From contig OX337236.1 in NCBI GenBank assembly GCA_946965045.2, positions 1,798,001 through 1,862,000 on the forward strand: DNA of 64,000 nt, given 5' to 3'. Numbering within the stretch: the stretch's first letter is position 1; each line of letters starts with the position of its first letter. This DNA is from Epithemia pelagica (taxonomy: Eukaryota > Protista > Bacillariophyta). The position numbers were made by a program, and so were the translations under genes. Shown in pieces: positions 13,507 to 60,763 of this stretch. The notes under the pieces were generated by a model that was not told where the DNA came from, searched no databases, and worked only from the letters and a program-made list of their open reading frames with translations.

Positions 13507-15147
13507 ATGGTATGGTTTGAGTGTTTTTTCCTTACCGTTACTTGTTGCGCTAGCTCCCATGCACTTCTCAGTTCAAAGAAGATTCATGGACTGACGCAAC
13601 GATCACAGCGGCTAGAGTCGACAGATCGGAATCGTCCTCGCACAACAGATGGAGTCTCTGTCCAAGAATTCAATCCGGGAGACTCGTTCGAGGAAGATAC
13701 TAACCTCGGGGATACAACCGAGCAATTTAACTGGTTCAAGGCATGGTACCCTCTGACACCCGTCGAGATTCTCGATCCAGAAATCCCACACCGATATCAG
13801 CTCCTTGGTATGGATTTGGTCGTTTGGAGAGATGGAGCTATTGAGGGAAGAGAATTTGGCAGCAAGAAAAAGCGATCCAAGAAAGCTGAACGCGTCGGTG
13901 GAGAATGGCGAGTTTTTATGGACGAATGTCCTCACCGTAAAGTACCGTTGTCAGAAGGCCGCGTTGAAGACGATCGTACGCTGTTATGCAGCTATCACGG
14001 TTTCCGTTTTGATGGGAACGGAGCTTGCATTGACATTCCTCAGATTAGCAAGACAGAAGAGTTCTCATTGGAACGAGTGGCAGCCAACCCGAAAAGTCAC
14101 TGCAACTCGTTCCCAGTTCGAGTCATTGACGGGTTGTTGTGGGTGTGGCCTGAAACAGGTGACGATGCTCGCATTGAATCTGCGTTGACCGAACCAAAGA
14201 ATTATCGCTTGAGTGATAATGTTGACGCCGACCGCCTCTGGTATGGACCGTGGAACTACCGCGAGCTTCCGTACTCGGCAGATTATTTCATTGAGAACGT
14301 GGTGGATCCAGCACACGTAGGCGTCAGTCATCACGGAATCGTGGGGAATCGGTACAAAGAGCAAACCATGACTCTTGAGAAAAAGAGTCCTTTGACAAAA
14401 GATGGATTTTCTATGGTTGGTGTTATTCCAGGTCGGGACAGCCCAACCGTCACGAACTACATAGCTCCATGTCTTGTTGCAATTGAAAACATGTATGGCT
14501 CGGAGGGGGCCATGCAGACACTTGAACTGTACGCTTCACCAAGCCGACCAGGTTTCTGCAACCATGTAGGGCGACAGGTGGTATGTAAGGATCGAAATGG
14601 CGAGCTCCCGAAAGTGCTGAAGAGATTCACATCTATTCCTGTCCTATCATGGTTGAATCATGTGCTTACTGCTTCCTTCTTGAATCAAGATGCAGTGTTT
14701 TTGCACTATCAAGAACGCTATTTGGCCAAGACAGGATTGTTTATATCGCACAAAAAGTCAAATATGACGAATTACATGAGTCCAATGTTCCTGACGAAAG
14801 GTGATTATGGCGTTGCAAAGTACCGTACGTGGTTTTCCAGAATGGCGGGTGGGTTCATACCATATAAGAACGGTGGTTCATTGCCAGAAGCAAACGCAGA
14901 TATTTGTTTTGACCAGTGGAAGTCACATACAGCGAAGTGCAGGTACTGTCTCGATGCACTGGCAAATCTTCGAAAAGCTCGGATGTTGGCCTTTTTATTG
15001 AGTGGGATCCTTGCAGTTTGGCAGCCTTCTCCTCGTAAAACACTGAACGTTTTATGTGTTCTTGGAACCTCTGGCATTGGGTTTGGCATCAACTCTTTCA
15101 CTCGCAAGTTCTATCGACAGGAGTTCTCTCATGGCAGAAATGATTAA
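13507..15147 (+). CDS. Pheophorbide a oxygenase/TIC55/PTC52-like Rieske non-heme iron oxygenase, copy 1
   Basis: Rieske CPHR...CSYHG, mononuclear Fe site ENVVDPAHVGVSHH, C-terminal HTAKCRYC CxxC motif and TM hairpin; N-terminal signal peptide. Confidence 0.88.
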   Translation: MVWFECFFLTVTCCASSHALLSSKKIHGLTQRSQRLESTDRNRPRTTDGVSVQEFNPGDSFEEDTNLGDTTEQFNWFKAWYPLTPVEILDPEIPHRYQLLGMDLVVWRDGAIEGREFGSKKKRSKKAERVGGEWRVFMDECPHRKVPLSEGRVEDDRTLLCSYHGFRFDGNGACIDIPQISKTEEFSLERVAANPKSHCNSFPVRVIDGLLWVWPETGDDARIESALTEPKNYRLSDNVDADRLWYGPWNYRELPYSADYFIENVVDPAHVGVSHHGIVGNRYKEQTMTLEKKSPLTKDGFSMVGVIPGRDSPTVTNYIAPCLVAIENMYGSEGAMQTLELYASPSRPGFCNHVGRQVVCKDRNGELPKVLKRFTSIPVLSWLNHVLTASFLNQDAVFLHYQERYLAKTGLFISHKKSNMTNYMSPMFLTKGDYGVAKYRTWFSRMAGGFIPYKNGGSLPEANADICFDQWKSHTAKCRYCLDALANLRKARMLAFLLSGILAVWQPSPRKTLNVLCVLGTSGIGFGINSFTRKFYRQEFSHGRND

Positions 15148-15564: not shown

Positions 15565-17172
15565 ATGAGGGTAAACGGTGCTCTTCTTCTTTCTGCTGCC
15601 TTCGGCACATGGTGCCATGCGTTTGTACCCACCAGTCGCAATGTACCTGTGATCTTGCCGCGAACTCGTTTGTCGTCGACCCTCGATTATCCTCAAACGA
15701 AGGATGATTTGAGCTTTGAAGAATACGCCGAACCCGAAGACACAAGTGAGCAATTTAACTGGTTCAAGGCATGGTACCCTCTGATAGCCGTCGAGATGCT
15801 CGATCCAGAGATCCCTCACCGATATCAGCTTCTTGGTATGGATTTGGTCATCTGGAAAGATGCAGCTATTGAGGGAGGAGAATTCGGCAGCAAGAAAAAG
15901 CGATCCAAGAAAGCTGAACGCATCGGTGGAGAATGGCGTGTTTTTATGGACGAATGTCCTCACCGTAAAGTGCCGTTGTCAGAAGGCCGTGTGGAAGATG
16001 ATGGCACGCTGTTGTGCAGCTATCATGGTTTCCGTTTTGATGGTGAAGGAGCTTGCATTGACATTCCTCAAATTAGCAAGACAGAAGAGTTCTCATTGGA
16101 ACGAGTGGCAGCCAACCCGAAAAGTCGCTGCAACTCTTTCCCAGTTCGAATCATTGACGGGTTGTTGTGGGTGTGGCCTGAAACAGGCGATGATGCTCGA
16201 ATTGAATCTGCTTTGACCGAGCCAAAGAATTATCGCTTGAGTGACGATGTAGACACTGATCGAGTCTGGTACGGCCCATGGAGCTACCGCGAGCTTCCGT
16301 ACTCAGCCGATTATTTCATGGAAAACGTGGTGGATCCCTCACATGTGTCAATCAGTCACCATGGAATTGTAGGCAACCGTTACGAGGACCAGACCTTGAG
16401 CCTCGAGAAGAAGGATCCTTTGAACAAAGATGGATTTTCCTTCCGGACCCACACTGCAACAGGAGACCATCCATCCACAACCACGTACAAAGCCCCAACA
16501 ACTGTGACCATTGAGGCCCCCTACGGATCGGAGGGAGCTCAACAGACGCTTGAACTTCACGCTTCCCCTAGCCGGCCAGGCTTTTGCAATCACATTGGAA
16601 GAATGGTAATTGTCAAAGACGAAAGCGGGAAAATGCCTGGGCTTTTCCGTCAATTTACCCTGCCTCTTCCTAAATGGGTGAATCATGTGATGGCAGCGTC
16701 GTTTCTGAATCAAGACGCTGTGTTCTTGCACTACCAAGAACGTCATTTGGCCAAAACGGGTTCTTACATTTCGCATGAGAAGTCAGATAGAACCAACTAC
16801 ATGACTCCCATGTTTCTGACCAAGGGAGATTACGGGGTTGCCAAGTATCGTACCTGGCTCTCGAGATTGGCGGGAGGCTTTGTGCCGTACAAGAATGGAG
16901 GTGCATTGTCGGCCGCCGATCCTGCGGATTGTTTTGACCAATGGCATTCGCACACGAGCAAGTGCAAGATTTGTTTGGATGCCCTCAAAAATCTCAAAAA
17001 GGCTCGCATGGCCGCCTTTGTTCTCAGTGGAATACTGGGTGTGGGACAGCCACTTCCCCGGAAAGCGTTGAACCTGGTGGGTATGTTCGCAACGGCAGGA
17101 ATCGGCTTTGGAATCAACTCCTTGATTGGAAAGTTTTACCGAAACGACTACTCACACAATACCAACGACTAG
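15565..17172 (+). CDS. PAO/TIC55/PTC52-like Rieske oxygenase, copy 2, plastid targeted
   Basis: Same motifs as copy 1 (CPHR, CSYHG, DPSHVSISHH, HTSKCKIC); signal peptide ending CHA^FVP resembles the diatom ASAFAP bipartite signal. Confidence 0.9.
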   Translation: MRVNGALLLSAAFGTWCHAFVPTSRNVPVILPRTRLSSTLDYPQTKDDLSFEEYAEPEDTSEQFNWFKAWYPLIAVEMLDPEIPHRYQLLGMDLVIWKDAAIEGGEFGSKKKRSKKAERIGGEWRVFMDECPHRKVPLSEGRVEDDGTLLCSYHGFRFDGEGACIDIPQISKTEEFSLERVAANPKSRCNSFPVRIIDGLLWVWPETGDDARIESALTEPKNYRLSDDVDTDRVWYGPWSYRELPYSADYFMENVVDPSHVSISHHGIVGNRYEDQTLSLEKKDPLNKDGFSFRTHTATGDHPSTTTYKAPTTVTIEAPYGSEGAQQTLELHASPSRPGFCNHIGRMVIVKDESGKMPGLFRQFTLPLPKWVNHVMAASFLNQDAVFLHYQERHLAKTGSYISHEKSDRTNYMTPMFLTKGDYGVAKYRTWLSRLAGGFVPYKNGGALSAADPADCFDQWHSHTSKCKICLDALKNLKKARMAAFVLSGILGVGQPLPRKALNLVGMFATAGIGFGINSLIGKFYRNDYSHNTND

Positions 17173-50996: not shown

Positions 50997-51745
50997 ATGG
51001 CAACCGCCAACAAGTCTCTGCTCTCTTTTTATTGGAGACTTCTAGTTTGGACGTTGCTTGTATGTATCCGACGTGTTTATCCGATGAGGCTAGTAGTGCA
51101 GCGAGTCAAGTCGGCTTCGATTACGGTGGAAGGTCAAGTTGTGTCGTCCATTGGACCCGGCGCGTTGGCTCTTGTTGGCCTTCATGAGCACGACCAACAA
51201 GATGATTTGAAAGAATGTTGCAAGAAGTTGTTGGCTTGCAAGCTGTGGGAAAATGACTCAGGAGCTCTATGGAGACATTCCGTCAAACAGAGAGAACTGG
51301 AAATACTGCTTGTCAGTCAATTTACGCTTTATGGCAAATTGTCAAAGAAGAATCAACCTGACTATAAACATGCAATGAAAAATGAACCGGCTAGAAAAAT
51401 GTACAGGGAATTCTTGGATCTAGTAAGAGAATCTTACGTGAGCGACAAGGTTAAGGATGGCGTTTTTGGGGCCATGATGGTAAGTGGCAACGTCCATCAA
51501 CGTTCTTTGGTTGTTGCATTGGATAGAGGAAATGTGTTAGGGTGCGACATGACCTATGGCTCCACTTCTTATGATTACACATTCCTTAGCTAACTTCGCC
51601 GTTTTTACCTGCTCAGGACGTGGCGCTCGTCAACGATGGTCCGGTTACCTTGATAATTGAATCAGAGCCCAAGGCTCCGTTAATGCAGGACGCCGAGGAC
51701 GAAGCGAAAGCATCCATTGAACTGTCGGGAGAGGATCTAAGCTAA
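50997..51745 (+). CDS. DTD1: D-aminoacyl-tRNA deacylase; exons 50997(or 51084)..51479 and 51617..51745
   Basis: MRLVVQRVKSAS, SQFTL, GVFGAMM|DVALVNDGPVT; intron 51480-51616. Confidence 0.93.
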
Positions 51746-52477: not shown

Positions 52478-53236
52478 GGTTTTCTTTTCCGTTTGAAGTC
52501 TTGTCGACGCCGCAGGAGATCAATTTGTGGCCACTATTCGGTACAAGCAAACCAAGAGTAGGATGTTACGAAATGCGAACGCGGACAAACTATGTGGTCT
52601 GATAATTCGTCAGAGAAACTTTGGACTTCGATGACCTACGCGGCACTTATAGATGCGCTTCCGGTAGTTAGACTGGTAGGACGCGATGAGTTTCGAAGTT
52701 ACGAAGCATCGCCTTTTAATTCGTGTAGTGACCGCAGCGTCTCGCGATGGCGACATAAGAAAATCCCTATCTTTCATATTCTTGTAAGCGGAAAAGGAAG
52801 ACTAATATTTATTACGTGGAGTCTGTCTACTCCCTATACTTCAGGAGGGGAGTAGTCAACTCCCCATCAGAGATCAGAGACATAATGAGGAAGACGGAGG
52901 ACACCATGGGTCATAAGGGAAGTCATAGTCTTTTGACTCACCTCAACATTAACTTATATTTAAGTACGAGTACTCGTACCTCGTACTCGTATTCTCGTAG
53001 ATCAGAGCTTGTTCTTGTTCCTTGCTAGCTTGAGAGAGTTTCCTATTGGACCTTATCCTTCCAGTTTTCAGAAACGACGTTTTCTGCTCATAATTCATAA
53101 TTCACGATATATCGTCAGCTACAAGTTGGTGTTCTTGTCAGGGTTGTGTAGTACAATAATCACACATTTGCCAAAATACATGACTATGTGATTTACTATG
53201 ACTAACTATGAAGTCATGTAGTAAAATCAGTAAGTA

Positions 53237-53841
53237 AGGGCTGGGTAAGCCGATCCATGTTCGGCTAGGTAGGCTCAGTACAAAAGCTACGTAGAGTACA
53301 TAAAATCAGATAGTACACGTCACGCCGGAAATGGTCGGAATTTCAAAAAAAAGCAAAAACGCTCGACAATGATGGCGAGATCCGGTGACGCCGTATGCAT
53401 TCACCCATGCATCGCATAAACATCCAACCACCGTAAGTCCTTTACCTTTACCTTTGACATTGTTGTCTGAAATTACAGAAGATTTACCCAGTTGGCTGAA
53501 AAGGTATGCTCATTTTTCTGCAGTGATGAAATCGAACGACCGCCCTAACTCACTCATTTTTCAATGCTGACTCGACCGAATTGAAAGCATAGTCACTCTA
53601 GTAGTAAATAATCTTCTTGTCAAAGCGGTCGAGGCAAGCTCTATTATTGAGGAAGTTATGGCCATGGGGGTGATGGCTTCCACCATTGTCGAGCGATGGC
53701 TTCCAATTTGCATTGTTTCTCGTGGCAGCAAGTTTTCAATTTGAAACCATCCGCCCCACTTCTTACACAGACGAAAATAGTACTACGTAGGTTAATGTAC
53801 TGAGCCTACTTAGCCGAACATGGATCGGCTTACCCAGCCCT
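53237..53841. mobile_element. MITE (605 bp) nested in the left subterminal region of the hAT
   Basis: 46-bp TIR AGGGCTGGGTAAGCCGATCCATGTTCGGCTA(G/A)GTAGGCTCAGTACA with 1 mismatch, flanked by TA on both sides; no long ORF. Confidence 0.85.
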
Positions 53842-54246
53842 TATGTTCCCCAGTTACTTTCAGTTGCCAATCAATCACTGCCTTCTCACTCTCACCCCAC
53901 CGACTACAGTCATCACAGTCAGTCACCCCTCATTCTTCAGACGTACTATTACTCTGTTAGTAAGTAACTCACTTACGGATCTCCCTACTATTAGTCTCCA
54001 AGTCAATACCCTGACATGGGTAATATCGACTCTGTAGTACAAAGTCACTCCTCATCCAACCGACAAAGTACGACTACAATTGCATTCTGTCACACAATTC
54101 ACCAAAATTCCAAACAAAACAGATGAGGATGATCCTCATCGTACCTATGCACCTCTGCTTCTCTGTATAATGACAGATCTTTTGAGTCTCATCCTTCAAC
54201 AATCCAACAGCAATCTTCCTCCTCAGCACAGTGTATTCGATGGGAG

Positions 54247-57200
54247 ATGTCTGAACCTATGGGAGATCCCTCGGACAAGATGGATTCTCTTCCCACCCAG
54301 GCCACTGACAAGACATCCAACAAGAAGACTCCTCCATCGAAGACCAAAGGTTCAAAGAAGAAGTCATCGTCTTCATCCAAGAAGCCTTCCTCTTCCTCTT
54401 CCAAAAAGACCACTCCCCCAACAATCAAGATGAAGCCATCAGCACTTGAAGCCCGGAAAGAGATTGTTGAGAAGGAAAGGGCTCCAGCCAAGCAAGCCAG
54501 GGACGAGCAATATCAGCAAGAGAAGCAGCTTGTACCTCTTCTGGAACGTCCCCATCCCCTGATATTTGAGTCCAACTGCTCTCCATACTGGAAGTGGGCC
54601 CTACACATTGACTGGATGAAACTCGAGAAGTATATTCTCGAGAACGAAGGCAATATCCCCCAATATTCCGGCCTCATTAAACTGATACAGGATTTTGCTT
54701 CTACTACACTTCTTGGTCCAAATGACAAGATCGAAAACGCCACATCAACAAAAAGCAAGAATGCCGCCTTTGTGGAGAAGTATCAGAAAGTCAGCCGGTG
54801 GATTGTTCTTTGCCCGTTATGCTTTTATTCCAACGAAAAGTCTTTGGATCAAGCTGCATTGCGGTGTGGCAATAAAACTGGGAGGACGTCCAATATCATG
54901 ACTCATCGAAAAAACCATCACAAGAACGTTGTATTTGAGGATGAGACAGCACCAAGCAACCAATCAACTCTGTCTTCTTTCCGAGTAAAGACCACTACGA
55001 AATCACAATCATCTCAGCAACTACAGAAGCTGATCTACCAGTTCGTCAATGATTGCTGCCTACCAGCGATCACAGTGGAGAAACCTCAGTTCCGCGACCT
55101 TATCCGTTTCGCTATTAAAAATGCTCCCGCGCTGAAAGATTCTTCAGCAGAAATTATGAGCAGACGGCAGATAACAAAAATTCGCTTGGACTCCTATCAA
55201 GGCTTCTTTGACATTGTCTCTGGTCTCATTACGCGGGTGCGTGCGGAATACAACCGTCTTTGCCTACAAGACATTCCATTTGTCACGGTCTGCCATGACA
55301 TCTGGCAGGCCAAAGACCATGATGTCTTAGGCGTTACAGTAATGTTCATCGATCCAAGGAACTGCAAAATATATCGCATTCCCATTGGGCTGGCGGATTG
55401 CGAGGGCCATGCAGCAACCGATGTGGCAAATCTCACCGAGACCCTGCTTCTAAGTGTGACACTCACAAAAAAAGATCTCTGTGCCTCAGTGAACGACAAC
55501 ACGACGGCTGCTGTACTTGCCGGAAAGTACATTGTCGGGACCGACCGTGCTGGCAAATGTGACATGCACAAGGCAGAGTTAGTGCTGAAGCATGCTACCG
55601 GTCTCGTGCAACGCTACCAAAACCGGATTCTGATGGATTCTAATCCCTCCTTTATTGAATTCTGGTCTATATTCAAGAAGTTTTCAGCATGGTTGACGAG
55701 TAGCAAAGCACCTTGTCGGTTTCAAAATTTCCGAGAAAACTGTGAATCCTATGGATGTCAAGTGATCAAGATTCCCCTACCAAACGATACAAGGGTTGGT
55801 GGTATTGTTCTCTCGTTGGAAACCCTTGCTCGACTGAAGTGGGCAATGGATCAATACGCACTTCTTGCCGCTGGGAGTGATCCCAAATTTGCCAAACTAT
55901 ATCCCAGCGAAGAGGATTGGCAATTATTGTCACAGTACGAGGGTATTCTATCGCCACTGAAACAAGTGGCGATGACACTACAATCAGATGCTCCTGGTGC
56001 AAGCTCGGCCGCTTTACTCGAGATTTTCTGTTCATACTTTCAAGCCACAACCATGAGCCTTCCTCCAAATGGAGAAAATAGTGGAGTTTCTTGCATCAAA
56101 CTAGCAAAAGGCAGTCCGGATCAATGGGATGCTCGGCTTTCGATAGATGATCTAGACACCTTTCGAGACACAGTTGAATTTGATGACCTTTTGCCAGGAC
56201 CCCGACTACTGGTCCGTCGCATTATATCAGAATATAAGCACTACCTTGTCCACCGTGATCATGATGGACTAAAGGCTGTTTGTTGCAATCCTCTATTGGC
56301 AAACATCTACGAAAACATGTTTGTCAATTTTGGTATTTACAACATGGACACTGTCAAGGAAGGTCGAAGAATAATTATACAGGACATGGTGGACAAGTTC
56401 AGCAACACGCGGGTCTCTACGATCGGTGCAGCAATGGCCGCCCAATCCAACACAGCAAACAAACCTGCCAACAAACCTGCGACACGGTCTTTCAATTTGA
56501 CTGCTGAAGACGACTCACAGACGAATAACAAAACAACTAAGCGCAAGACCAAGAATGTTTTCGCCAGCATGCGCAAGTCCCATGACTTGCAGCAACAGGT
56601 GCTCCTGCACTTGAGTGGAAGAGCTTCGGACGCCGCCTCTGATCAGGAGAAAATGCGAGCCCTTAAGAAGACATGCACTACCTGCTATGACGATTTTCGG
56701 AAGAACTGCGAAAATCATATTGACAATCATTGGGAAAGTATAATTTGACAATATAGTACGGAGGAGTTTGAGAAAGTTTCGAAGAAGTGGGACGATGATG
56801 AAACTGAAGAGTTCAAAGAGAATTGTGTCAATAGGAACTACCTGGAGATTGGCAAGTACTTCGATCTCCTTGGTTGGTGGAGGGCCCATTCCATGATGTT
56901 CCCCTACTTGTACCCAAGTGCCATCATATGGCTAGCGAAGCCAGCCACCAATGCCTTCCAAGAACGCATCTTCTCAATTGGTACATGGATGCACCAGAAC
57001 AAGTTAATGAGAAGGGCCCACAAGAAAACCAACGAGATGCGCACAATGGAATGTGTCAACCGGTCCTTGTTGGAAGAAATCAAGAAGACTGAGATTGACA
57101 TTGCGAATGGAGTGTCGGTTAGTAACTCTTATGTTCAGCCTCCGAAAGCCAAGGATAGTCCTGTATTGGAAGCAGCTACTCAGCAAAAACAAGTTCAACT

Positions 57201-58197
57201 GTCGGCTGTTAGAGAGAATGCCAATGGGTTGGCATCCTACGAACTATCGTTTGACCATGAAACCCACTTGATGGAAGATCCCGCCGTGATAATGACGTTT
57301 CTGGAAACCTTTCCTGAACGGGACAGCTCAGGAAAGGTTCTCGCCGGGACAGAATGGGACGAGTCTGGTAGAGTTATTCTCAAAGGAGAAGAAGATGGAG
57401 AAGAAGATGATGACAAGGCCGGTGATCCTCCGGTAGGAAACCCACCCAGCAAGGGTGTGGACACAGTAAATGACAAAGATGCAACAGAGGCCGTCCAAGG
57501 ACTGTCCGACGGTAAGAAAAAAGCTGCCCGTCCCACGAAACCGAGAGAATTTGTCGCAAACCGTATCGTACATGTGCGCATTAAAGCACGTCATGAAGAA
57601 AACTCGGAAGATGAGTCCGATGATAAGTCAGAACCCGAGGAAGACAGTGACAAGATGTTGCAATGTCTCATGAAGAAAGGGATCGACAATCCACAGGCTG
57701 ACATGGACCGAAAGGAAGTAGAGGATGAGTACAACGACGACCTGGACAGAGACAAAGACCATAATACTGTTGTGGATGTCGAAGAAGAAGATGAAGAAGA
57801 AATTGTCGTTATAGAGACTCCGCCCAAAGAAAGTGGAAGGCCCAAAGAAAGTGGAAGGACGAAAAAGTCTATGAAGAACAAGAATGCAGAGCCCAGTACG
57901 AAGAAAAGGAAGCAATCAAAGATAGTTCCCCGAAAGGGAATTAGACAATCGCCACGACAGAAAAAATCGAAGACCTCAAAATCCATGGATAGCCAAGGGC
58001 ATTCGGGGAAGAAAACCAGTCGATCCTTGGCTGCGAGTTTGGAAACAGCCAACACAGGGGAGAAAGACGGACAAGTACAAGACAGGAATGAAGGAAGCGA
58101 AGGAGAGAACGAGAGCAGGGATGGAACTGAGGAAGGAGAAGACAATGGCGAATCCGCATTCGAAAATACTGACGACGATGGAGACTCGTCAGCGTAG
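54247..58197 (+). CDS. hAT transposase (BED finger + DDE RNase-H fold + C-terminal dimerisation domain), interrupted by one in-frame TGA at 56746-56748
   Basis: BED-like WIVLCPLC...TSNIMTHRKNHH; VEKPQFRDLI; catalytic CHDIW, VNDN; CDMH (CxxH); PNDTR; WWRAH...PATNAFQERIFS. ORFs 54247..56748 and 56893..58197 share one frame with no other stop. Confidence 0.9.
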
Positions 58198-58242
58198 TAA
58201 ATGTCAAGAAAGAATACATGTGATATGCAAGCAACTATTTAA

Positions 58243-59127
58243 TTATTTTAACGGACGATACTTATTAATCATAGTCTTGACCTTTTGGAACATATCGGCA
58301 TCCAAGTGAAGGGTTTCTCCAAGTCTTGTCAATAGAATACCACGGCCAACAATTGTGTTTGAATGTTGTCCAAGCGCCCCAAAAAGAGGATTCACAAGTG
58401 ACCATTGATTGTGAGGGACCCAGGCCTCAAGATACTTGGAGACCGTAAGTCCAGTATGTTTCGGGAAGGTCCAGCCGAGAAAAGCAGACCATTTGATTAC
58501 ATGAATATCCGCAGGGATTCCATCAACGCGTCCAAAGGCAGCTTCTAAAATAATGCATGCCGTCTTGTAGCCAATGCCATGTAGCGTCGTCAGTTCGTGG
58601 ATTGTTATGTCTCTTGGGATTACTCCATTATGCCTTTGGATGAAGTAGTCCGCAGCATTAACAATGCGTTCCGTGTTTGCATAGAACCTACCAGATTCGG
58701 AAAGAAGGGAAAACATTGCGTTCATGCCGAATTGTTGAGCAATGTCAATCACACTCGTTGCAGAAATCATGCCACAAGCAAAAATCCGTGGCATGATTAA
58801 GCTCAATTGCAAATCGGAAGTGCTTGAACTCATGCAGATTGTCATTAGTACCATGAATGGTCGGTTGGCAAATGGCTGGTTAACATGATTGTCAATCCAG
58901 GATTCCCAGTTGTCACGTTGTGACACCAAACCAGATAATTTCAATTGTTGGTGAAATTTGATCATCTGGTTGATTTCCTTGATTTGTCTTTCTTTGATTG
59001 TTGTTGGAATGGGGGGAACATGAACTTCCAATGACGACGGACTGATGTCTTTGAGTTTTGGAGGAGTGCCTGGCTGGTGATTACTTGCAGGATATTGTAT
59101 TTTTGTTTTCGATCTGGAGGCCAGCAT
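58243..59127 (-). CDS. Endonuclease III (Nth)-like HhH-GPD DNA glycosylase, cargo of the hAT element; no 4Fe-4S motif
   Basis: PFMVLMTICMSSSTSD, QRHNGVIPRD, HhH LTTLHGIGYKTACIILEAAFG with catalytic Lys, GIPADIH with catalytic Asp, LGW...LEAWVP...VNPLFGALGQ all align by eye with Nth/NTH1. The reading frame stays open upstream to about 59285. Confidence 0.88.
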   Translation of the reverse strand: MLASRSKTKIQYPASNHQPGTPPKLKDISPSSLEVHVPPIPTTIKERQIKEINQMIKFHQQLKLSGLVSQRDNWESWIDNHVNQPFANRPFMVLMTICMSSSTSDLQLSLIMPRIFACGMISATSVIDIAQQFGMNAMFSLLSESGRFYANTERIVNAADYFIQRHNGVIPRDITIHELTTLHGIGYKTACIILEAAFGRVDGIPADIHVIKWSAFLGWTFPKHTGLTVSKYLEAWVPHNQWSLVNPLFGALGQHSNTIVGRGILLTRLGETLHLDADMFQKVKTMINKYRPLK

Positions 59128-59216
59128 TATAATCTTGGTGATTAGATTGTTCCTTGATCGTGTAGCATAGGAATGTATAGGAGAATGAATGTGTTTTCGG
59201 ATTGATGATTCGTTCG

Positions 59217-60089
59217 TTATCCTTTTCTTGTCGGGTAACTTGTTTTCCTTTTTTTGGATCGGGAAGTAACCAATTCGTGATTTGCATTAGGAGAGTCGTT
59301 TGGGGCCGGGCCAGGAGAATCATTTGGTGGGTCTTTATTACGGAAAAGCGTACTTGGGGAAGTACAGTGACATTCATGCGATTCTGTGGATACAGAAGCT
59401 TTGGTTGGAGAGTTGGAATGGTTGTATTGAATTTCCATTTCTTGTAGATATGGGGATATGCAGATTGGAATACATTCCTCATCGTACGAGTCTTCTTCAC
59501 AGCATTGCCGAATAACGTATTCGTTGGTGAAGTTTTGTGCGGATTGTTTGCAGTGAAAAACAACCGTGGTGCGATTCAACCATGAAAGAAGAATGGCTTG
59601 AACACTGGCAGTCGGGAACTCCTCTTTGCATTGTCGAGTGTAATCTAAACATTGCTGGAAAAGGGGAGACCGGTTAATTGTTATCTTTGGAGTGCATCGA
59701 ACCACAAGGAAAAGAAGACTCAAATCATTCGACACGGAGGGAGATAGAATGTGTTCTTGGAAGTCTGATGGAGAAATTGTGGTCGGATGGTCGTAGATAC
59801 ACCGAACAACAATGCAACAGCACAGTTCCAGACGGTGTGTGAATTTTAAAGCAGACAGTAAGCAAGCGTGTGTTGTAGAGCTTTGTGTATTGTCGTCTTC
59901 AAATACAATGTGCCCTTGGTGTCGAATGAGCCATGCAATGGTATGCCGTTTAACCCAAGTAAGCAGTTGTAAGCGGGAGATGCCTTCGTGGGGACTGACA
60001 AGGTACTCTTGAATTGCTTTGTAATACGATGCATTACAATGAAGGATGTACTTGATGTTGCATTCGGATTTACATTCAAGAAAGTTCAT
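59217..60089 (-). CDS. Cys/His-rich unknown ORF inside the hAT, probably the N-terminal half of the glycosylase gene (frameshift)
   Basis: 290-aa ORF overlapping the open glycosylase frame; one extra A in the A7 run near 59249-59255 would fuse the two. Confidence 0.55.
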   Translation of the reverse strand: MNFLECKSECNIKYILHCNASYYKAIQEYLVSPHEGISRLQLLTWVKRHTIAWLIRHQGHIVFEDDNTQSSTTHACLLSALKFTHRLELCCCIVVRCIYDHPTTISPSDFQEHILSPSVSNDLSLLFLVVRCTPKITINRSPLFQQCLDYTRQCKEEFPTASVQAILLSWLNRTTVVFHCKQSAQNFTNEYVIRQCCEEDSYDEECIPICISPYLQEMEIQYNHSNSPTKASVSTESHECHCTSPSTLFRNKDPPNDSPGPAPNDSPNANHELVTSRSKKRKTSYPTRKG

Positions 60090-60189
60090 GATTTGGTGCT
60101 GTGGGTCGCTGCTGTGAAATGGTAAGGCAAGGGGGGAAGAGGTCGCTGTCCATTTTCTCTGTGTTGTATGTAGTATGTCGTAAGACTCT

Positions 60190-60535
60190 ATAGTGGTGAC
60201 TTAGTCATCAATAGTCATGACTATGGAGAGAAATTTAGTAAATCATTACTCAGTGAGACGAGGTACTTTAGTCGTAAAGTATAGTCATAGGATGACATGA
60301 CGGTGATTAGTCAATGGTAGTAAAGACACTTACTAAGAGATGTATGACTCTAGTACTGTAGTGAAGTAGCCTCTAATATGGAGGAGGACTATAGTCAATA
60401 AGTCAAGTAGTTATCAGTTGGTGAAATGACTAAGAGTAATTCAGTAAGTCGATGAGGTGAAGTGTAGGGTACTTGATAGTATCTAGTAAAGGAACTAGAT
60501 GCTAAGATCATGATAGATAGTCAATTAGTCATAGA
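60190..60535. repeat. hAT subterminal short repeats (TAGTCA/TGACTA)
   Basis: Many copies of TAGTCA/TGACT at the right end, and TGACTA copies at 53180-53210 at the left end. Confidence 0.65.
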
Positions 60536-60686
60536 AAATTCATTATGTCATTACTACACAACCCTGGTTCTTGTTCTTTGCACTTTGCAGTTGGGAGTTG
60601 GGAGTGCAGTAGCTTGCTAAAGATGTCGATGATAACATTATGAGCTTAGGTCTAAAGCGAAGTGTGAGACGTGATACGGGTTTGAC

Positions 60687-60763
60687 GCATGTCTGAAGTG
60701 CAGGTCTGCGCATGTTCGAGGTGCAGGTCTGCGCATGTCTGAGGCGCAGGTCTGCGCACGTCT
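60687..60763 (+). repeat. 3.3 x 23-bp tandem repeat (gcatgtctgaggtgcaggtctgc consensus)
   Basis: Units start at 60687, 60710, 60733, with a partial unit at 60756. Confidence 0.85.

What the first reader, a model, noticed from the sequence alone, without database searches (positions are those of the whole stretch)
53139..60566. Complete hAT transposon carrying an endonuclease III-like DNA glycosylase as cargo: candidate anti-silencing or self-repair module
Seen: perfect 15-bp TIRs, an exact 8-bp TSD, a BED-finger hAT transposase on +, and between it and the right TIR a convergent HhH-GPD glycosylase on - (stop codons 45 bp apart). The glycosylase keeps the HhH Lys (GIGYKTA) and the Asp (ADIH) but has lost the C-terminal 4Fe-4S cysteines. 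Established: Lys-type HhH-GPD enzymes are bifunctional glycosylase/AP lyases; the superfamily includes Nth, the T:G mismatch enzymes MIG and MBD4, and the plant 5mC glycosylases DEMETER/ROS1; diatom TEs carry CG methylation; other eukaryotic transposons carry epigenetic cargo (VANC in Arabidopsis VANDAL elements, TET/JBP with fungal KDZ transposons). Inference: the element may use the enzyme to remove 5mC, repair T:G lesions from 5mC deamination, or process hAT hairpin/abasic intermediates. By eye the sequence is closer to Nth than to DEMETER. I do not know of a described diatom hAT with this cargo.
Basis: partly seen in the sequence, partly recalled or inferred. Interest (0 to 1): 0.92.

Follow-up and report, generated by a model that had tools for sequence, protein, structure and literature searches.

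The report
Diatom hAT transposon with own glycosylase
This is one copy, with both genes broken, of an old family of cut-and-paste (hAT) transposons in a pennate diatom whose members carry, beside the transposase, their own endonuclease III-like DNA base-excision enzyme; I found no paper describing such cargo, and it may help the element resist DNA-methylation silencing.

Summary
The anatomy is real. There are perfect 15-bp CAGGG inverted ends, an exact 8-bp target duplication, a hAT transposase gene and a convergent endonuclease III-like glycosylase gene that keeps the catalytic Lys and Asp and has no Fe-S cysteines.

The copy is not "complete". A 98%-identical sibling in the same assembly (L004) has an uninterrupted 1316-aa transposase ORF and a 615-aa cargo ORF. 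The window copy differs in three ways:
- a CGA>TGA stop in the transposase;
- a 1-bp deletion that splits the cargo gene;
- a nested 603-bp MITE.

The true cargo protein has three parts: an orphan N-terminal domain, a conserved basic motif, and the glycosylase.

At least six subfamilies in this one raphid pennate diatom genome (30-49% protein identity) keep the same two-gene layout. Five are shown to lie inside their own CAGGG ends, four of them with exact duplications. Transposase and cargo distances correlate, catalytic residues are invariant, dN/dS is 0.3-0.4, and the cargo clade lies outside canonical NTH1/Nth. Neutral capture is therefore rejected.

A contig consistent with an empty site suggests the insertion is polymorphic. 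CpG sites mutate 12 times faster than other sites, which fits methylated elements.

Function, anti-silencing or repair, remains untested. The scan had already found this family on other DNA of the same genome. I found no paper describing it.

The parts
53131..53138 (.). Left copy of the 8-bp target-site duplication GTTCTTGT
   Evidence: identical to 60567-60574
53139..53153 (+). Left terminal inverted repeat, starting CAGGG like Ac
   Evidence: identical in sibling L004
53154..54246 (+). Left subterminal and 5' region holding TAGTCA(T) motif copies, interrupted by the nested MITE
   Evidence: (counted on sibling L004): the motif occurs 12 times in the two terminal 450-bp stretches and 0 times in the 5.9-kb interior
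53237..53841 (.). Nested 603-bp MITE with 46-48-bp inverted ends and a TA duplication; specific to this copy
   Evidence: I1; absent from L004 and from sibling contigs (joint 53234>53842); word depth 5,000-41,000 against about 120-150 for the flank
54247..58197 (+). hAT transposase gene, 1316 codons, no intron, broken in this copy
   Evidence: the intact 1316-aa ORF is in L004; 27 relatives at 35-99% identity
54811..54921 (+). CxxC...HxxxxH zinc-finger-like motif (codons 189-225), BED-like
   Evidence: C189, C192, H220 and H225 are invariant in 19 transposases; no Pfam zf-BED hit
56746..56748 (+). Premature stop TGA at codon 834, a CpG-to-TpG change from CGA
   Evidence: sibling contigs and L004 have C at 56746
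56812..57030 (+). hAT C-terminal dimerisation region with the QERxFS motif (catalytic Glu)
   Evidence: PF05699 E 4.1e-8; aligns to Hermes; E906 invariant
57040..58194 (+). Long acidic/basic low-complexity tail of the transposase
   Evidence: translation; dN/dS 0.95 against L004
58243..59222 (-). C-terminal part of the cargo gene: conserved basic motif plus the Fe-S-less Nth-like glycosylase/AP-lyase domain (Lys at 58564-58566, Asp at 58507-58509)
59222..59226 (-). Frameshift site: the A-run is one base shorter than in sibling copies
   Evidence: extra base after 59222 in three sibling contigs and in L004; the fused frame equals the 615-aa P0024
59223..60089 (-). N-terminal part of the cargo gene: orphan domain of about 235 aa plus a disordered linker
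   Evidence: no fold match
60090..60551 (-). Right subterminal region and cargo promoter side, dense in TAGTCA(T) motifs
60552..60566 (-). Right terminal inverted repeat
60567..60574 (.). Right copy of the target-site duplication

Best explanation
Shown. The stretch is a copy of a two-gene hAT transposon lineage of a raphid pennate diatom. Autonomous members are about 6.8-7.1 kb. They have CAGGG inverted ends, make 8-bp duplications and carry TAGTCA(T) subterminal motifs. They encode two convergent intronless genes. One is a 1,200-1,400-aa transposase. The other is a 540-640-aa protein with an orphan N-terminal domain, a conserved basic motif (TR..SRSK..I.Y..RH.PG.PPKLK) and an endonuclease III-type domain. 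That domain keeps the Schiff-base Lys and the Asp but has two helices in place of the 4Fe-4S loop. Both genes have diverged together and stayed under purifying selection. The window copy probably sits at a polymorphic site. It is defective (stop codon, frameshift, nested MITE), so it could move only with transposase supplied by a sibling.

Inferred. The cargo is a catalytically active bifunctional glycosylase/AP lyase that the element keeps for its own benefit. I think it most likely excises modified cytosine (5mC or an oxidised or deaminated derivative) from element DNA, so that host base-excision repair restores unmodified C and CpG-methylation silencing is weakened. The N-terminal domain and basic motif would supply targeting.
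For: Architecture and mobility:
- Ends and duplication.
- Sibling L004 with the same ends, a different duplication and intact 1316-aa and 615-aa ORFs.
- A contig that runs to 53138 and continues with 21 nt of the right flank, consistent with an empty site.
- Subterminal motif 12 versus 0.

Conservation of the pair:
- Six subfamilies in the same assembly. Five were checked for ends and have CAGGG ends; four have exact duplications.
- Pairwise identities of transposase and cargo correlate, r 0.83, Mantel 7/720.
- dN/dS against L004: transposase core 0.19, cargo 0.31 and 0.37.
- Lys and Asp invariant in 13 and 20 divergent members.
- The cargo clade is monophyletic (SH-aLRT 93; core 99) and lies outside a clade of 86 canonical Nth/NTH1 sequences (100).

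Enzyme type: NTHL1 and EndoIII are the best sequence and fold matches.

Methylation context:
- Transitions are 12 times more frequent at CpG than at other sites, and element CpG o/e is 0.75-0.83 against 0.85-0.95 in flanks (four of five at 0.92-0.95).
- In a model diatom, loss of DNMT5a removes methylation and young TEs become overexpressed: PMC9998398.
- Precedent for transposons carrying enzymes that reverse DNA modification: TET/JBP in fungal DNA transposons, including hAT7 (PMC12730594).
Against: - No biochemical, methylation or expression data exist.
- The one probable RNA run covers only two short stretches of the element and none of the glycosylase ORF.
- By sequence and fold the domain is nearest ordinary Nth/NTH1. 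No DEMETER/ROS1 chain appears among the PDB sequence hits at E<=1 or in the top 50 fold hits.
- Copies still lose CpGs 12 times faster than other sites, so any protection is incomplete.
- A related hAT in another diatom-like assembly (L008, transposase cluster of 205 members) has no glycosylase. The cargo is therefore not needed for proliferation everywhere.
- The N-terminal domain has no recognisable DNA- or methyl-binding fold.
Confidence: 0.4

Rival explanations
1. Transposition-linked repair. The cargo is an ordinary Nth-type enzyme for oxidised pyrimidines and AP sites. The element uses it to clean up damaged bases or abasic sites at or near its ends, or at donor and target sites, which raises the yield of excision, integration or gap repair.
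For: Nearest relatives by sequence and fold are Nth/NTH1. The Lys and Asp of bifunctional Nth enzymes are invariant. Other eukaryotic DNA transposons and Helitrons carry nuclease or repair-type second genes (own knowledge).
Against: The known hAT mechanism (nick, hairpin on flanking DNA, host end-joining) has no step that needs base excision (established from Hermes and Ac work). The host should already have a canonical NTH, since the canonical clade is separate, although I could not retrieve the host copy. This reading does not explain why an orphan N-terminal domain and a basic motif are conserved with the enzyme.
Confidence: 0.22
2. Anti-decay mismatch repair. The enzyme removes T (or U) opposite G that arises by deamination of methylated CpG in silenced copies, as MBD4 and MIG do, and so slows mutational death of the family.
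For: Copies do decay mainly at CpG: 40 of 78 transitions, a 12-fold excess, including the stop codon of this copy. Like MBD4, the domain has no Fe-S cluster.
Against: The mismatch-specific HhH-GPD enzymes (MutY, MIG, MBD4) are monofunctional and lack the Schiff-base Lys (established). This family keeps it invariantly. The 12-fold CpG excess shows little protection in practice. A silenced copy cannot express its own enzyme.
Confidence: 0.1
3. Non-catalytic role. The Nth fold serves as a DNA-binding or regulatory subunit, for example an accessory factor that recognises the ends or recruits host factors, and base excision is irrelevant.
For: The wedge Gln of Nth (SSQT) is Ser in all members (SSST). 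The Fe-S DNA-binding loop is replaced. The protein has extra conserved modules.
Against: The catalytic Lys, the Asp and the HhH-GPD motif residues are invariant across about 30% identity. That is hard to explain without catalysis.
Confidence: 0.07
4. Neutral passenger. A host NTH gene fragment was captured once (Pack-type) and has no function for the element.
For: DNA transposons do capture host genes. This particular copy has a broken cargo gene.
Against: The cargo is present in six subfamilies at 30-49% identity and diverges together with the transposase. dN/dS is 0.31-0.37. Active-site residues are invariant. The clade is separate from canonical Nth/NTH1. Intact 543-639-aa ORFs occur in several subfamilies.
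Confidence: 0.02

Closest known systems
TET/JBP-carrying DNA transposons of fungi (KDZ, hAT7, Harbinger, EnSpm and others; PMC12730594)
   Same: These are cut-and-paste transposons, including hAT members, that carry beside the transposase a gene for an enzyme acting on modified DNA bases. Cargo-bearing and cargo-less relatives coexist. The presumed use is against methylation silencing.
   Different: The enzyme class differs: an Fe(II)/2-oxoglutarate dioxygenase there, an HhH-GPD glycosylase/AP lyase here. The fungal TET genes moved between transposon superfamilies. Here the cargo co-diverges with one hAT lineage. The host is a diatom, not a fungus.
VANC anti-silencing proteins of Arabidopsis VANDAL (MULE) elements (PMC5735166)
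   Same: A second gene of a DNA transposon, kept by selection, that acts on the element's own copies to undo epigenetic silencing.
   Different: VANC is a sequence-specific DNA-binding protein without known enzymatic activity. Here the cargo has a complete base-excision active site. Anti-silencing is only inferred here.
Endonuclease III / NTH1 (Nth family of HhH-GPD glycosylases)
   Same: Best sequence and fold matches. The HhH motif, the Gly/Pro-rich loop with Asp, and the catalytic Lys are all present.
   Different: There is no 4Fe-4S cluster. The wedge Gln is replaced by Ser. An N-terminal extension of about 320 aa carries an orphan domain and a basic motif. The clade is separate from canonical Nth/NTH1, and the gene sits inside a transposon.
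DEMETER/ROS1 5-methylcytosine glycosylases of plants
   Same: Bifunctional Lys-type HhH-GPD enzymes descended from an Nth-like ancestor. This is the activity proposed here.
   Different: DME/ROS1 keep the Fe-S cluster and have large lineage-specific inserts and a C-terminal domain. No DME/ROS1 chain appears among the PDB sequence or top fold hits. If this family has 5mC activity, it would be an independent invention.
Yeast Ntg1 (Fe-S-less Nth homologue)
   Same: An Nth-family enzyme that works without the iron-sulfur cluster (own knowledge). It is among the fold hits (P31378).
   Different: Ntg1 is a host repair gene for oxidised bases, not transposon-borne, and lacks the N-terminal orphan domain.
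Ac / Hermes (hAT superfamily)
   Same: 8-bp duplication, CAGGG-type ends like Ac, subterminal short repeats, C-terminal dimerisation domain with the catalytic Glu, a CxxH block and an NDNT-type second Asp motif.
   Different: The transposase is twice as long, with a low-complexity tail of about 400 aa. There is a second conserved gene. Pfam sees only the dimerisation domain.

Membership tests
hAT superfamily of DNA transposons | 8-bp target-site duplication | tested here: met
   Exact 8-bp duplications flank the window copy, L002, L004, L006 and L008. L001 is not exact.
hAT superfamily of DNA transposons | Short terminal inverted repeats of the CAG/YARNG type | tested here: met
   15-16-bp perfect ends starting CAGGG in all six elements examined.
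hAT superfamily of DNA transposons | C-terminal hAT dimerisation domain (PF05699) | tested here: met
   33.3 bits against a cut-off of 21.4 in the window piece. 19 of 19 relatives hit it. The family profile hits Hermes at E 1.3e-6.
hAT superfamily of DNA transposons | DDE catalytic residues in an RNase H-like core with the CxxH block | tested here: inconclusive
   Invariant D351 (HDIW), D417 (NDNT), C438/H441 and E906 (QERxFS) fit the hAT blocks. Only the Glu region aligns to Hermes by sequence. No transposase structure was predicted.
hAT superfamily of DNA transposons | N-terminal BED zinc finger (present in many hATs, not all) | tested here: inconclusive
   Invariant C189, C192, H220 and H225. 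Pfam zf-BED hits none of 19 members at E<=0.01.
Endonuclease III / Nth family (HhH-GPD superfamily) | HhH motif followed by a Gly/Pro-rich loop and catalytic Asp | tested here: met
   GIGYKTA...GIPADIHV aligns to the NTHL1 and EndoIII motifs. D207 is invariant.
Endonuclease III / Nth family (HhH-GPD superfamily) | Schiff-base Lys in the HhH motif (bifunctional glycosylase/AP lyase) | tested here: met
   K188 aligns to the catalytic Lys of NTHL1 and EndoIII. It is invariant in 13 and 20 members. Activity itself was not tested.
Endonuclease III / Nth family (HhH-GPD superfamily) | C-terminal 4Fe-4S cluster (Cx6Cx2Cx5C) | tested here: not met
   No Cys cluster in the window protein. The motif is absent from every family member placed in the tree; the one hit in the range scanned, P0047, is a Citrus NTH homologue outside the family. 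Two helices are predicted in its place.
Endonuclease III / Nth family (HhH-GPD superfamily) | Nth fold | tested here: met
   AF2 model with pLDDT 87.8. Top PDB and Swiss-Prot fold matches are NTHL1, EndoIII and NTH1, probability 1.0, TM by hit up to 0.73.
Endonuclease III / Nth family (HhH-GPD superfamily) | Pfam HhH-GPD (PF00730) above threshold | tested here: inconclusive
   No hit for the window ORF at E<=0.1. 12 of 20 family members hit at E<=0.01.
Endonuclease III / Nth family (HhH-GPD superfamily) | Placement inside the canonical Nth/NTH1 clade | tested here: not met
   The family is one clade (SH-aLRT 93; core 99) lying with other Fe-S-less divergent groups, outside an 86-row canonical clade supported at 100.
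DEMETER/ROS1 5mC glycosylases | Sequence or fold closer to DME/ROS1 than to Nth; Fe-S cluster; DME-specific extra domains | tested here: not met
   No DME/ROS1 chain among the PDB sequence hits at E<=1 or the top 50 fold hits. No Fe-S motif. The N-terminal domain matches nothing.
DEMETER/ROS1 5mC glycosylases | 5-methylcytosine excision activity | not testable with these tools
   Needs an enzyme assay.
MBD4 / MIG mismatch glycosylases | Monofunctional active site without the Schiff-base Lys | tested here: not met
   The Lys is present and invariant.
Pack-type neutral gene capture | Cargo limited to one copy or subfamily, evolving neutrally, nested within the host gene clade | tested here: not met
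   Six subfamilies carry it. dN/dS is 0.31-0.37. It is a separate clade.
Transposon-borne DNA-modification enzymes (as TET/JBP+ transposons) | Enzyme gene lies inside the ends and duplications of an autonomous transposon and recurs across families | tested here: met
   The enzyme class differs from TET/JBP (PMC12730594).

The most novel reading that the evidence does not exclude
The cargo is a 5-methylcytosine (or oxidised or deaminated 5mC) DNA glycosylase. It would have been invented from an Nth-like ancestor independently of plant DEMETER/ROS1, and a diatom hAT lineage would use it as its own active-demethylation weapon against DNMT5-type CpG silencing. The orphan N-terminal domain would aim it at element DNA. 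I know of no other active DNA demethylase reported from stramenopiles or other transposon-encoded DNA glycosylase system.
Probability: 0.3. Interest if true: 0.9.

Novelty: new variant of a known kind. Interest (0 to 1): 0.7.

Why it matters
Transposons that carry their own counter-silencing tools are known from only a few cases: VANC in Arabidopsis and TET/JBP genes in fungal DNA transposons. This diatom hAT lineage has kept a complete base-excision active site next to its transposase through divergence down to about 30% protein identity, which points to a direct enzymatic action of the element on DNA bases.

If the substrate is 5mC or one of its derivatives, three things would follow. It would be a second, independent origin of glycosylase-based DNA demethylation. 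It would supply an active demethylase for diatoms; I know of no TET or ROS1 homologue reported there and did not check this. And it would offer a compact Fe-S-free Nth-type enzyme with new specificity.

If the substrate is ordinary oxidative damage, the family still shows a new kind of transposon accessory gene. The genome supplies natural controls for testing either reading: intact, broken and cargo-less lineages.

Tried and rejected
- An intron joining the two transposase ORFs. Rejected: both are in one frame, separated by a single TGA that is CGA in siblings.
The join is real, but the lesion is a 1-bp deletion in the A-run 59223-59226.
- A Cys/His-rich metal-binding N-terminal domain. Rejected: the cysteines are not conserved across subfamilies; only W53, W170 and P208 are.
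- Identity of the N-terminal domain. Foldseek against PDB, AFDB clusters and the ESM Atlas, and VIA-align wide, gave nothing above noise (best Z 4.5, weak Myb/HTH-like three-helix matches to residues 139-230). Atlas feature hits (SAND, TDBD) scored only 0.55.
- RNA evidence. No RNA run was found by search. Run X4 looks like RNA because its contigs have GT..AG joints. It covers only 54198-54413 and 60339-60566.
- The metagenome-contig scan with the glycosylase alignment returned only generic Nth genes at 23-38% identity, so it gave no information on distribution.
- L007 (a distant 796-aa Fe-S-less relative): its two convergent neighbour ORFs are not related to the hAT transposase.
- The single-sequence PDB search with the first transposase ORF found nothing.

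Full report
**1. The observation**

The ends are as described. 53139-53153 and 60552-60566 are perfectly complementary over 15 nt. They are the only two matches to this sequence in the window even with 2 mismatches, and 0 of 100 shuffles give two. The 8 bases outside each end are identical, GTTCTTGT.

ORFs on the + strand at 54247-56748 and 56893-58197, and on the - strand at 58243-59127, are present. The convergent stops are 45 bp apart.

The 294-aa minus-strand ORF matches human NTHL1 (E 2.6e-12), Geobacillus EndoIII (6e-10) and E. coli Nth (4e-8). The Lys of GIGYKTA and the Asp of ADIH align to the catalytic Lys and Asp. No cysteine cluster follows the GQ motif.

**2. The copy is not intact**

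The two + ORFs are in one frame. The frame 54247-58197 has 1316 codons with a single internal TGA at 56746-56748. Contigs of public DNA runs of the same organism carry a 98-99% identical version that reads C at 56746, giving CGA. They also have one extra base after 59222 (repeated).

That extra base lengthens the minus-strand A-run 59223-59226. It fuses the upstream minus ORF (60089-59220) in frame with the glycosylase ORF.

A sibling element fetched from the same assembly (L004, ENA ERZ21939226) is 98.0% identical over 6.7 kb. It has the same ends and a different exact duplication, and it holds an uninterrupted 1316-aa transposase ORF and a 615-aa cargo ORF, P0024. The P0024 sequence across the junction is what the repaired window frame predicts.

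The window copy also has a 605-bp insertion at 53237-53841: a 603-bp MITE with 46-48-bp inverted ends and a TA duplication. This MITE is absent from L004 and from the sibling contigs.

So this copy has a nonsense codon (a CpG-to-TpG change), a frameshift in the cargo gene and a nested MITE. It can be mobile only in trans.

**3. Host and genome**

The window's cysteine synthase is most similar to proteins of Epithemia (75%), Nitzschia, Cylindrotheca and Pseudo-nitzschia. The window also encodes pheophorbide a oxygenase paralogues. The host is therefore a raphid pennate diatom.

The same host protein is encoded on ERZ21939226 contig ctg1231l. The loci L001-L004, L006, L012 and L013 therefore come from the window's own genome assembly.

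**4. The transposase is a hAT**

- The piece after the stop hits the hAT dimerisation domain PF05699 (33.3 bits, cut-off 21.4). All 19 aligned relatives do the same.
- Hermes is the only PDB relative, for the single sequence and for the family profile (E 1.3e-6).
- Invariant columns in 19 transposases at 29-51% identity to the L004 transposase include C189, C192, H220 and H225 (a BED-like pattern that Pfam does not recognise), D351 in HDIW, D417 in NDNT, C438/H441, and E906 in QERxFS. These fit the classical hAT blocks.
- The motif TAGTCA(T) occurs 12 times in the two terminal 450-bp stretches and never in the 5.9-kb interior. Such arrays are typical of hAT subterminal binding sites.
- The last 400 or so residues are an acidic/basic tail evolving neutrally (dN/dS 0.95).

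**5. The cargo protein**

Full-length relatives are 517-715 aa, with the glycosylase at the C-terminus. The protein has four parts:
1. An N-terminal domain of about 235 aa. AF2 folds it with moderate confidence (blocks mostly 75-97). It matches no known fold and no Pfam family, and its cysteines are not conserved.
2. A disordered linker.
3. A conserved basic motif with invariant T310, R311 and Y333 and near-invariant R337, H338 and G341.
4. The Nth-like domain. Its model has pLDDT 87.8. Its best fold matches are NTHL1, EndoIII and eukaryotic NTH1.

Lys188 and Asp207 are invariant. The Nth wedge Gln is Ser in all members (SSST in place of SSQT). None has the Fe-S motif.

**6. Is the cargo a kept part of the element?**

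Yes, on five lines of evidence.

- The same layout recurs: cargo gene convergent with a 1,170-1,380-aa hAT transposase. It is seen in L001, L002, L004, L006, L012 and L013. The five elements checked for ends (L001, L002, L004, L006 and the window copy) have CAGGG ends. All but the degenerate L001 have exact 8-bp duplications. I did not look for the ends of L012 and L013.
- Among the six subfamilies, pairwise identity is 29-49% for both proteins and the two correlate (r 0.83; 7 of 720 permutations as high).
- Against L004, dN/dS is 0.19 for the transposase core and 0.31 and 0.37 for the two cargo pieces.
- A profile search of 1.84 billion representatives finds 39 clusters at E<=1e-30. Scores then fall sharply, from about 130-420 bits for family members to about 80-120 bits for generic Nth.
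- In a tree of 147 domains the family is one clade (SH-aLRT 93; core 99). It groups with other divergent Fe-S-less proteins, outside an 86-row canonical Nth/NTH1 clade supported at 100.

One caveat applies. A related hAT in another assembly (L008, ERZ25042306) has no detectable glycosylase or N-terminal domain. Its transposase is 36% identical, and it has the same CAGGGTT ends and an exact duplication. Its transposase cluster is the largest, with 205 members.

**7. Activity and methylation context**

In run X2 a contig aligns up to 53138 and then continues with 21 nt identical to the right flank just after the duplication (60575-60595) before diverging. This is what an empty allele with a single GTTCTTGT would look like, so the insertion is probably polymorphic.

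Word depth over the element is about three times that of the flank (336-403 against 117-148). That suggests only a few near-identical copies, but the tool warns that depth is a poor copy-number measure.

Between the window copy and L004, 40 of 78 transitions lie at CpG sites, a 12-fold higher rate per site. Element CpG o/e is 0.75-0.83 against 0.85-0.95 in flanks, with four of five flanks at 0.92-0.95.

This is the footprint of cytosine methylation. It fits published work showing that loss of DNMT5a in Phaeodactylum removes methylation and de-represses young TEs (PMC9998398).

Run X4 is probably RNA, because its contigs carry GT..AG joints. It covers only 54198-54413 and 60339-60566 of the element and nothing of the glycosylase ORF. 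This is weak evidence that this subfamily is largely silent in that sample.

**8. Mechanism**

What is shown: a conserved, selected two-gene hAT whose second gene has a complete bifunctional Nth-type active site.

What is inferred: what the enzyme does. The retained Schiff-base Lys speaks for an Nth/DME-type lyase-coupled enzyme and against MIG/MBD4-type mismatch enzymes, which lack it (established knowledge). hAT chemistry needs no base excision.

The elements are clearly targets of CpG methylation, and other DNA transposons carry demethylation-related enzymes (TET/JBP; PMC12730594). I therefore rank the readings as follows:
- excision of modified cytosine as an anti-silencing device: about 0.4;
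- ordinary oxidised-base or AP-site repair linked to transposition: about 0.2;
- T:G anti-decay repair: about 0.1;
- a non-catalytic role: below 0.1;
- neutral capture: about 0.02.

The sequence is nearest ordinary Nth and not DME/ROS1. CpG decay continues. A cargo-less relative has been successful.

**9. Novelty**

Seven full-text searches were run. Six, combining hAT, transposon, transposase, glycosylase, endonuclease III, HhH-GPD, diatom and cargo, found no description of a transposon-borne DNA glycosylase. The seventh was for diatom methylation background.

The closest published systems are TET/JBP-positive DNA transposons of fungi, including hAT7 (PMC12730594), and VANC of VANDAL elements (PMC5735166).

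This scan had already flagged and followed up the same family at several other places of the same genome. Those notes agree with what I tested here.
- the exact lesions of this copy;
- the intact sibling;
- the full 615-aa gene model and its orphan domain;
- the tree position outside canonical Nth;
- the co-divergence test;
- the CpG decay rate;
- the probable empty site;
- a cargo-less relative.

I class it as a new variant of a known kind: a transposon-encoded enzyme acting on DNA bases, of unproven function.

Noticed in passing
window 53237-53841: A 603-bp MITE with 46-48-bp inverted ends and a TA duplication is nested in the hAT's left subterminal region. Its word depth in public runs is 5,000-41,000 against about 120-150 for single-copy flank, so it belongs to a very abundant family. 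In the probable RNA run X4, contigs show GT..AG joints inside it (53432>53588, 53432>53593 and 53499>53584), as if parts of MITE copies are spliced out of transcripts.
   Followed up: partly
L008:4950-12014 (ENA ERZ25042306 ctg3424l): A related hAT (transposase 36% identical, CAGGGTTTGG ends, exact duplication AGCACCAC, 7065 bp) has no detectable glycosylase or N-terminal domain. The 3.3 kb downstream of its transposase has no long ORF. Its transposase cluster is the largest found, with 205 member sequences.
   Followed up: partly
L003:9983-12880: Two glycosylase-family fragments lie in opposite orientation about 1 kb apart, one 75% identical to the window's cargo, with no adjacent transposase. 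They sit in a region with Ty1/copia-type genes and look like nested or rearranged dead copies.
   Followed up: no
L009-L011 (JGI and ENA metagenome contigs): P0050/P0160, a 334-aa Fe-S-less Nth-like protein among the family's nearest outgroups, recurs on several metagenome contigs among many short unannotated ORFs. The context is unlike the hAT elements and may be viral or from a compact genome.
   Followed up: no
window 60686-60761: Three tandem copies of a 23-bp unit (CGCATGTCTGAAGTGCAGGTCTG-like) lie about 120 bp to the right of the element.
   Followed up: no
window 13507-15147 and 15565-17172: Two tandem paralogous genes with Rieske and PaO domains (pheophorbide a oxygenase type).
   Followed up: no
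window 51478-51616: Run X4 shows a 137-nt GT..AG joint in the flanking gene to the left of the element. This suggests X4 is an RNA data set and that this neighbour gene is expressed and spliced.
   Followed up: no
window 57040-58194 (transposase codons ~930-1316): The transposase has a tail of about 400 aa made of acidic and basic low-complexity sequence after the dimerisation domain, which is unusual for hAT. It evolves neutrally between siblings (dN/dS 0.95), yet a tail of similar length is kept in all subfamilies.
   Followed up: partly
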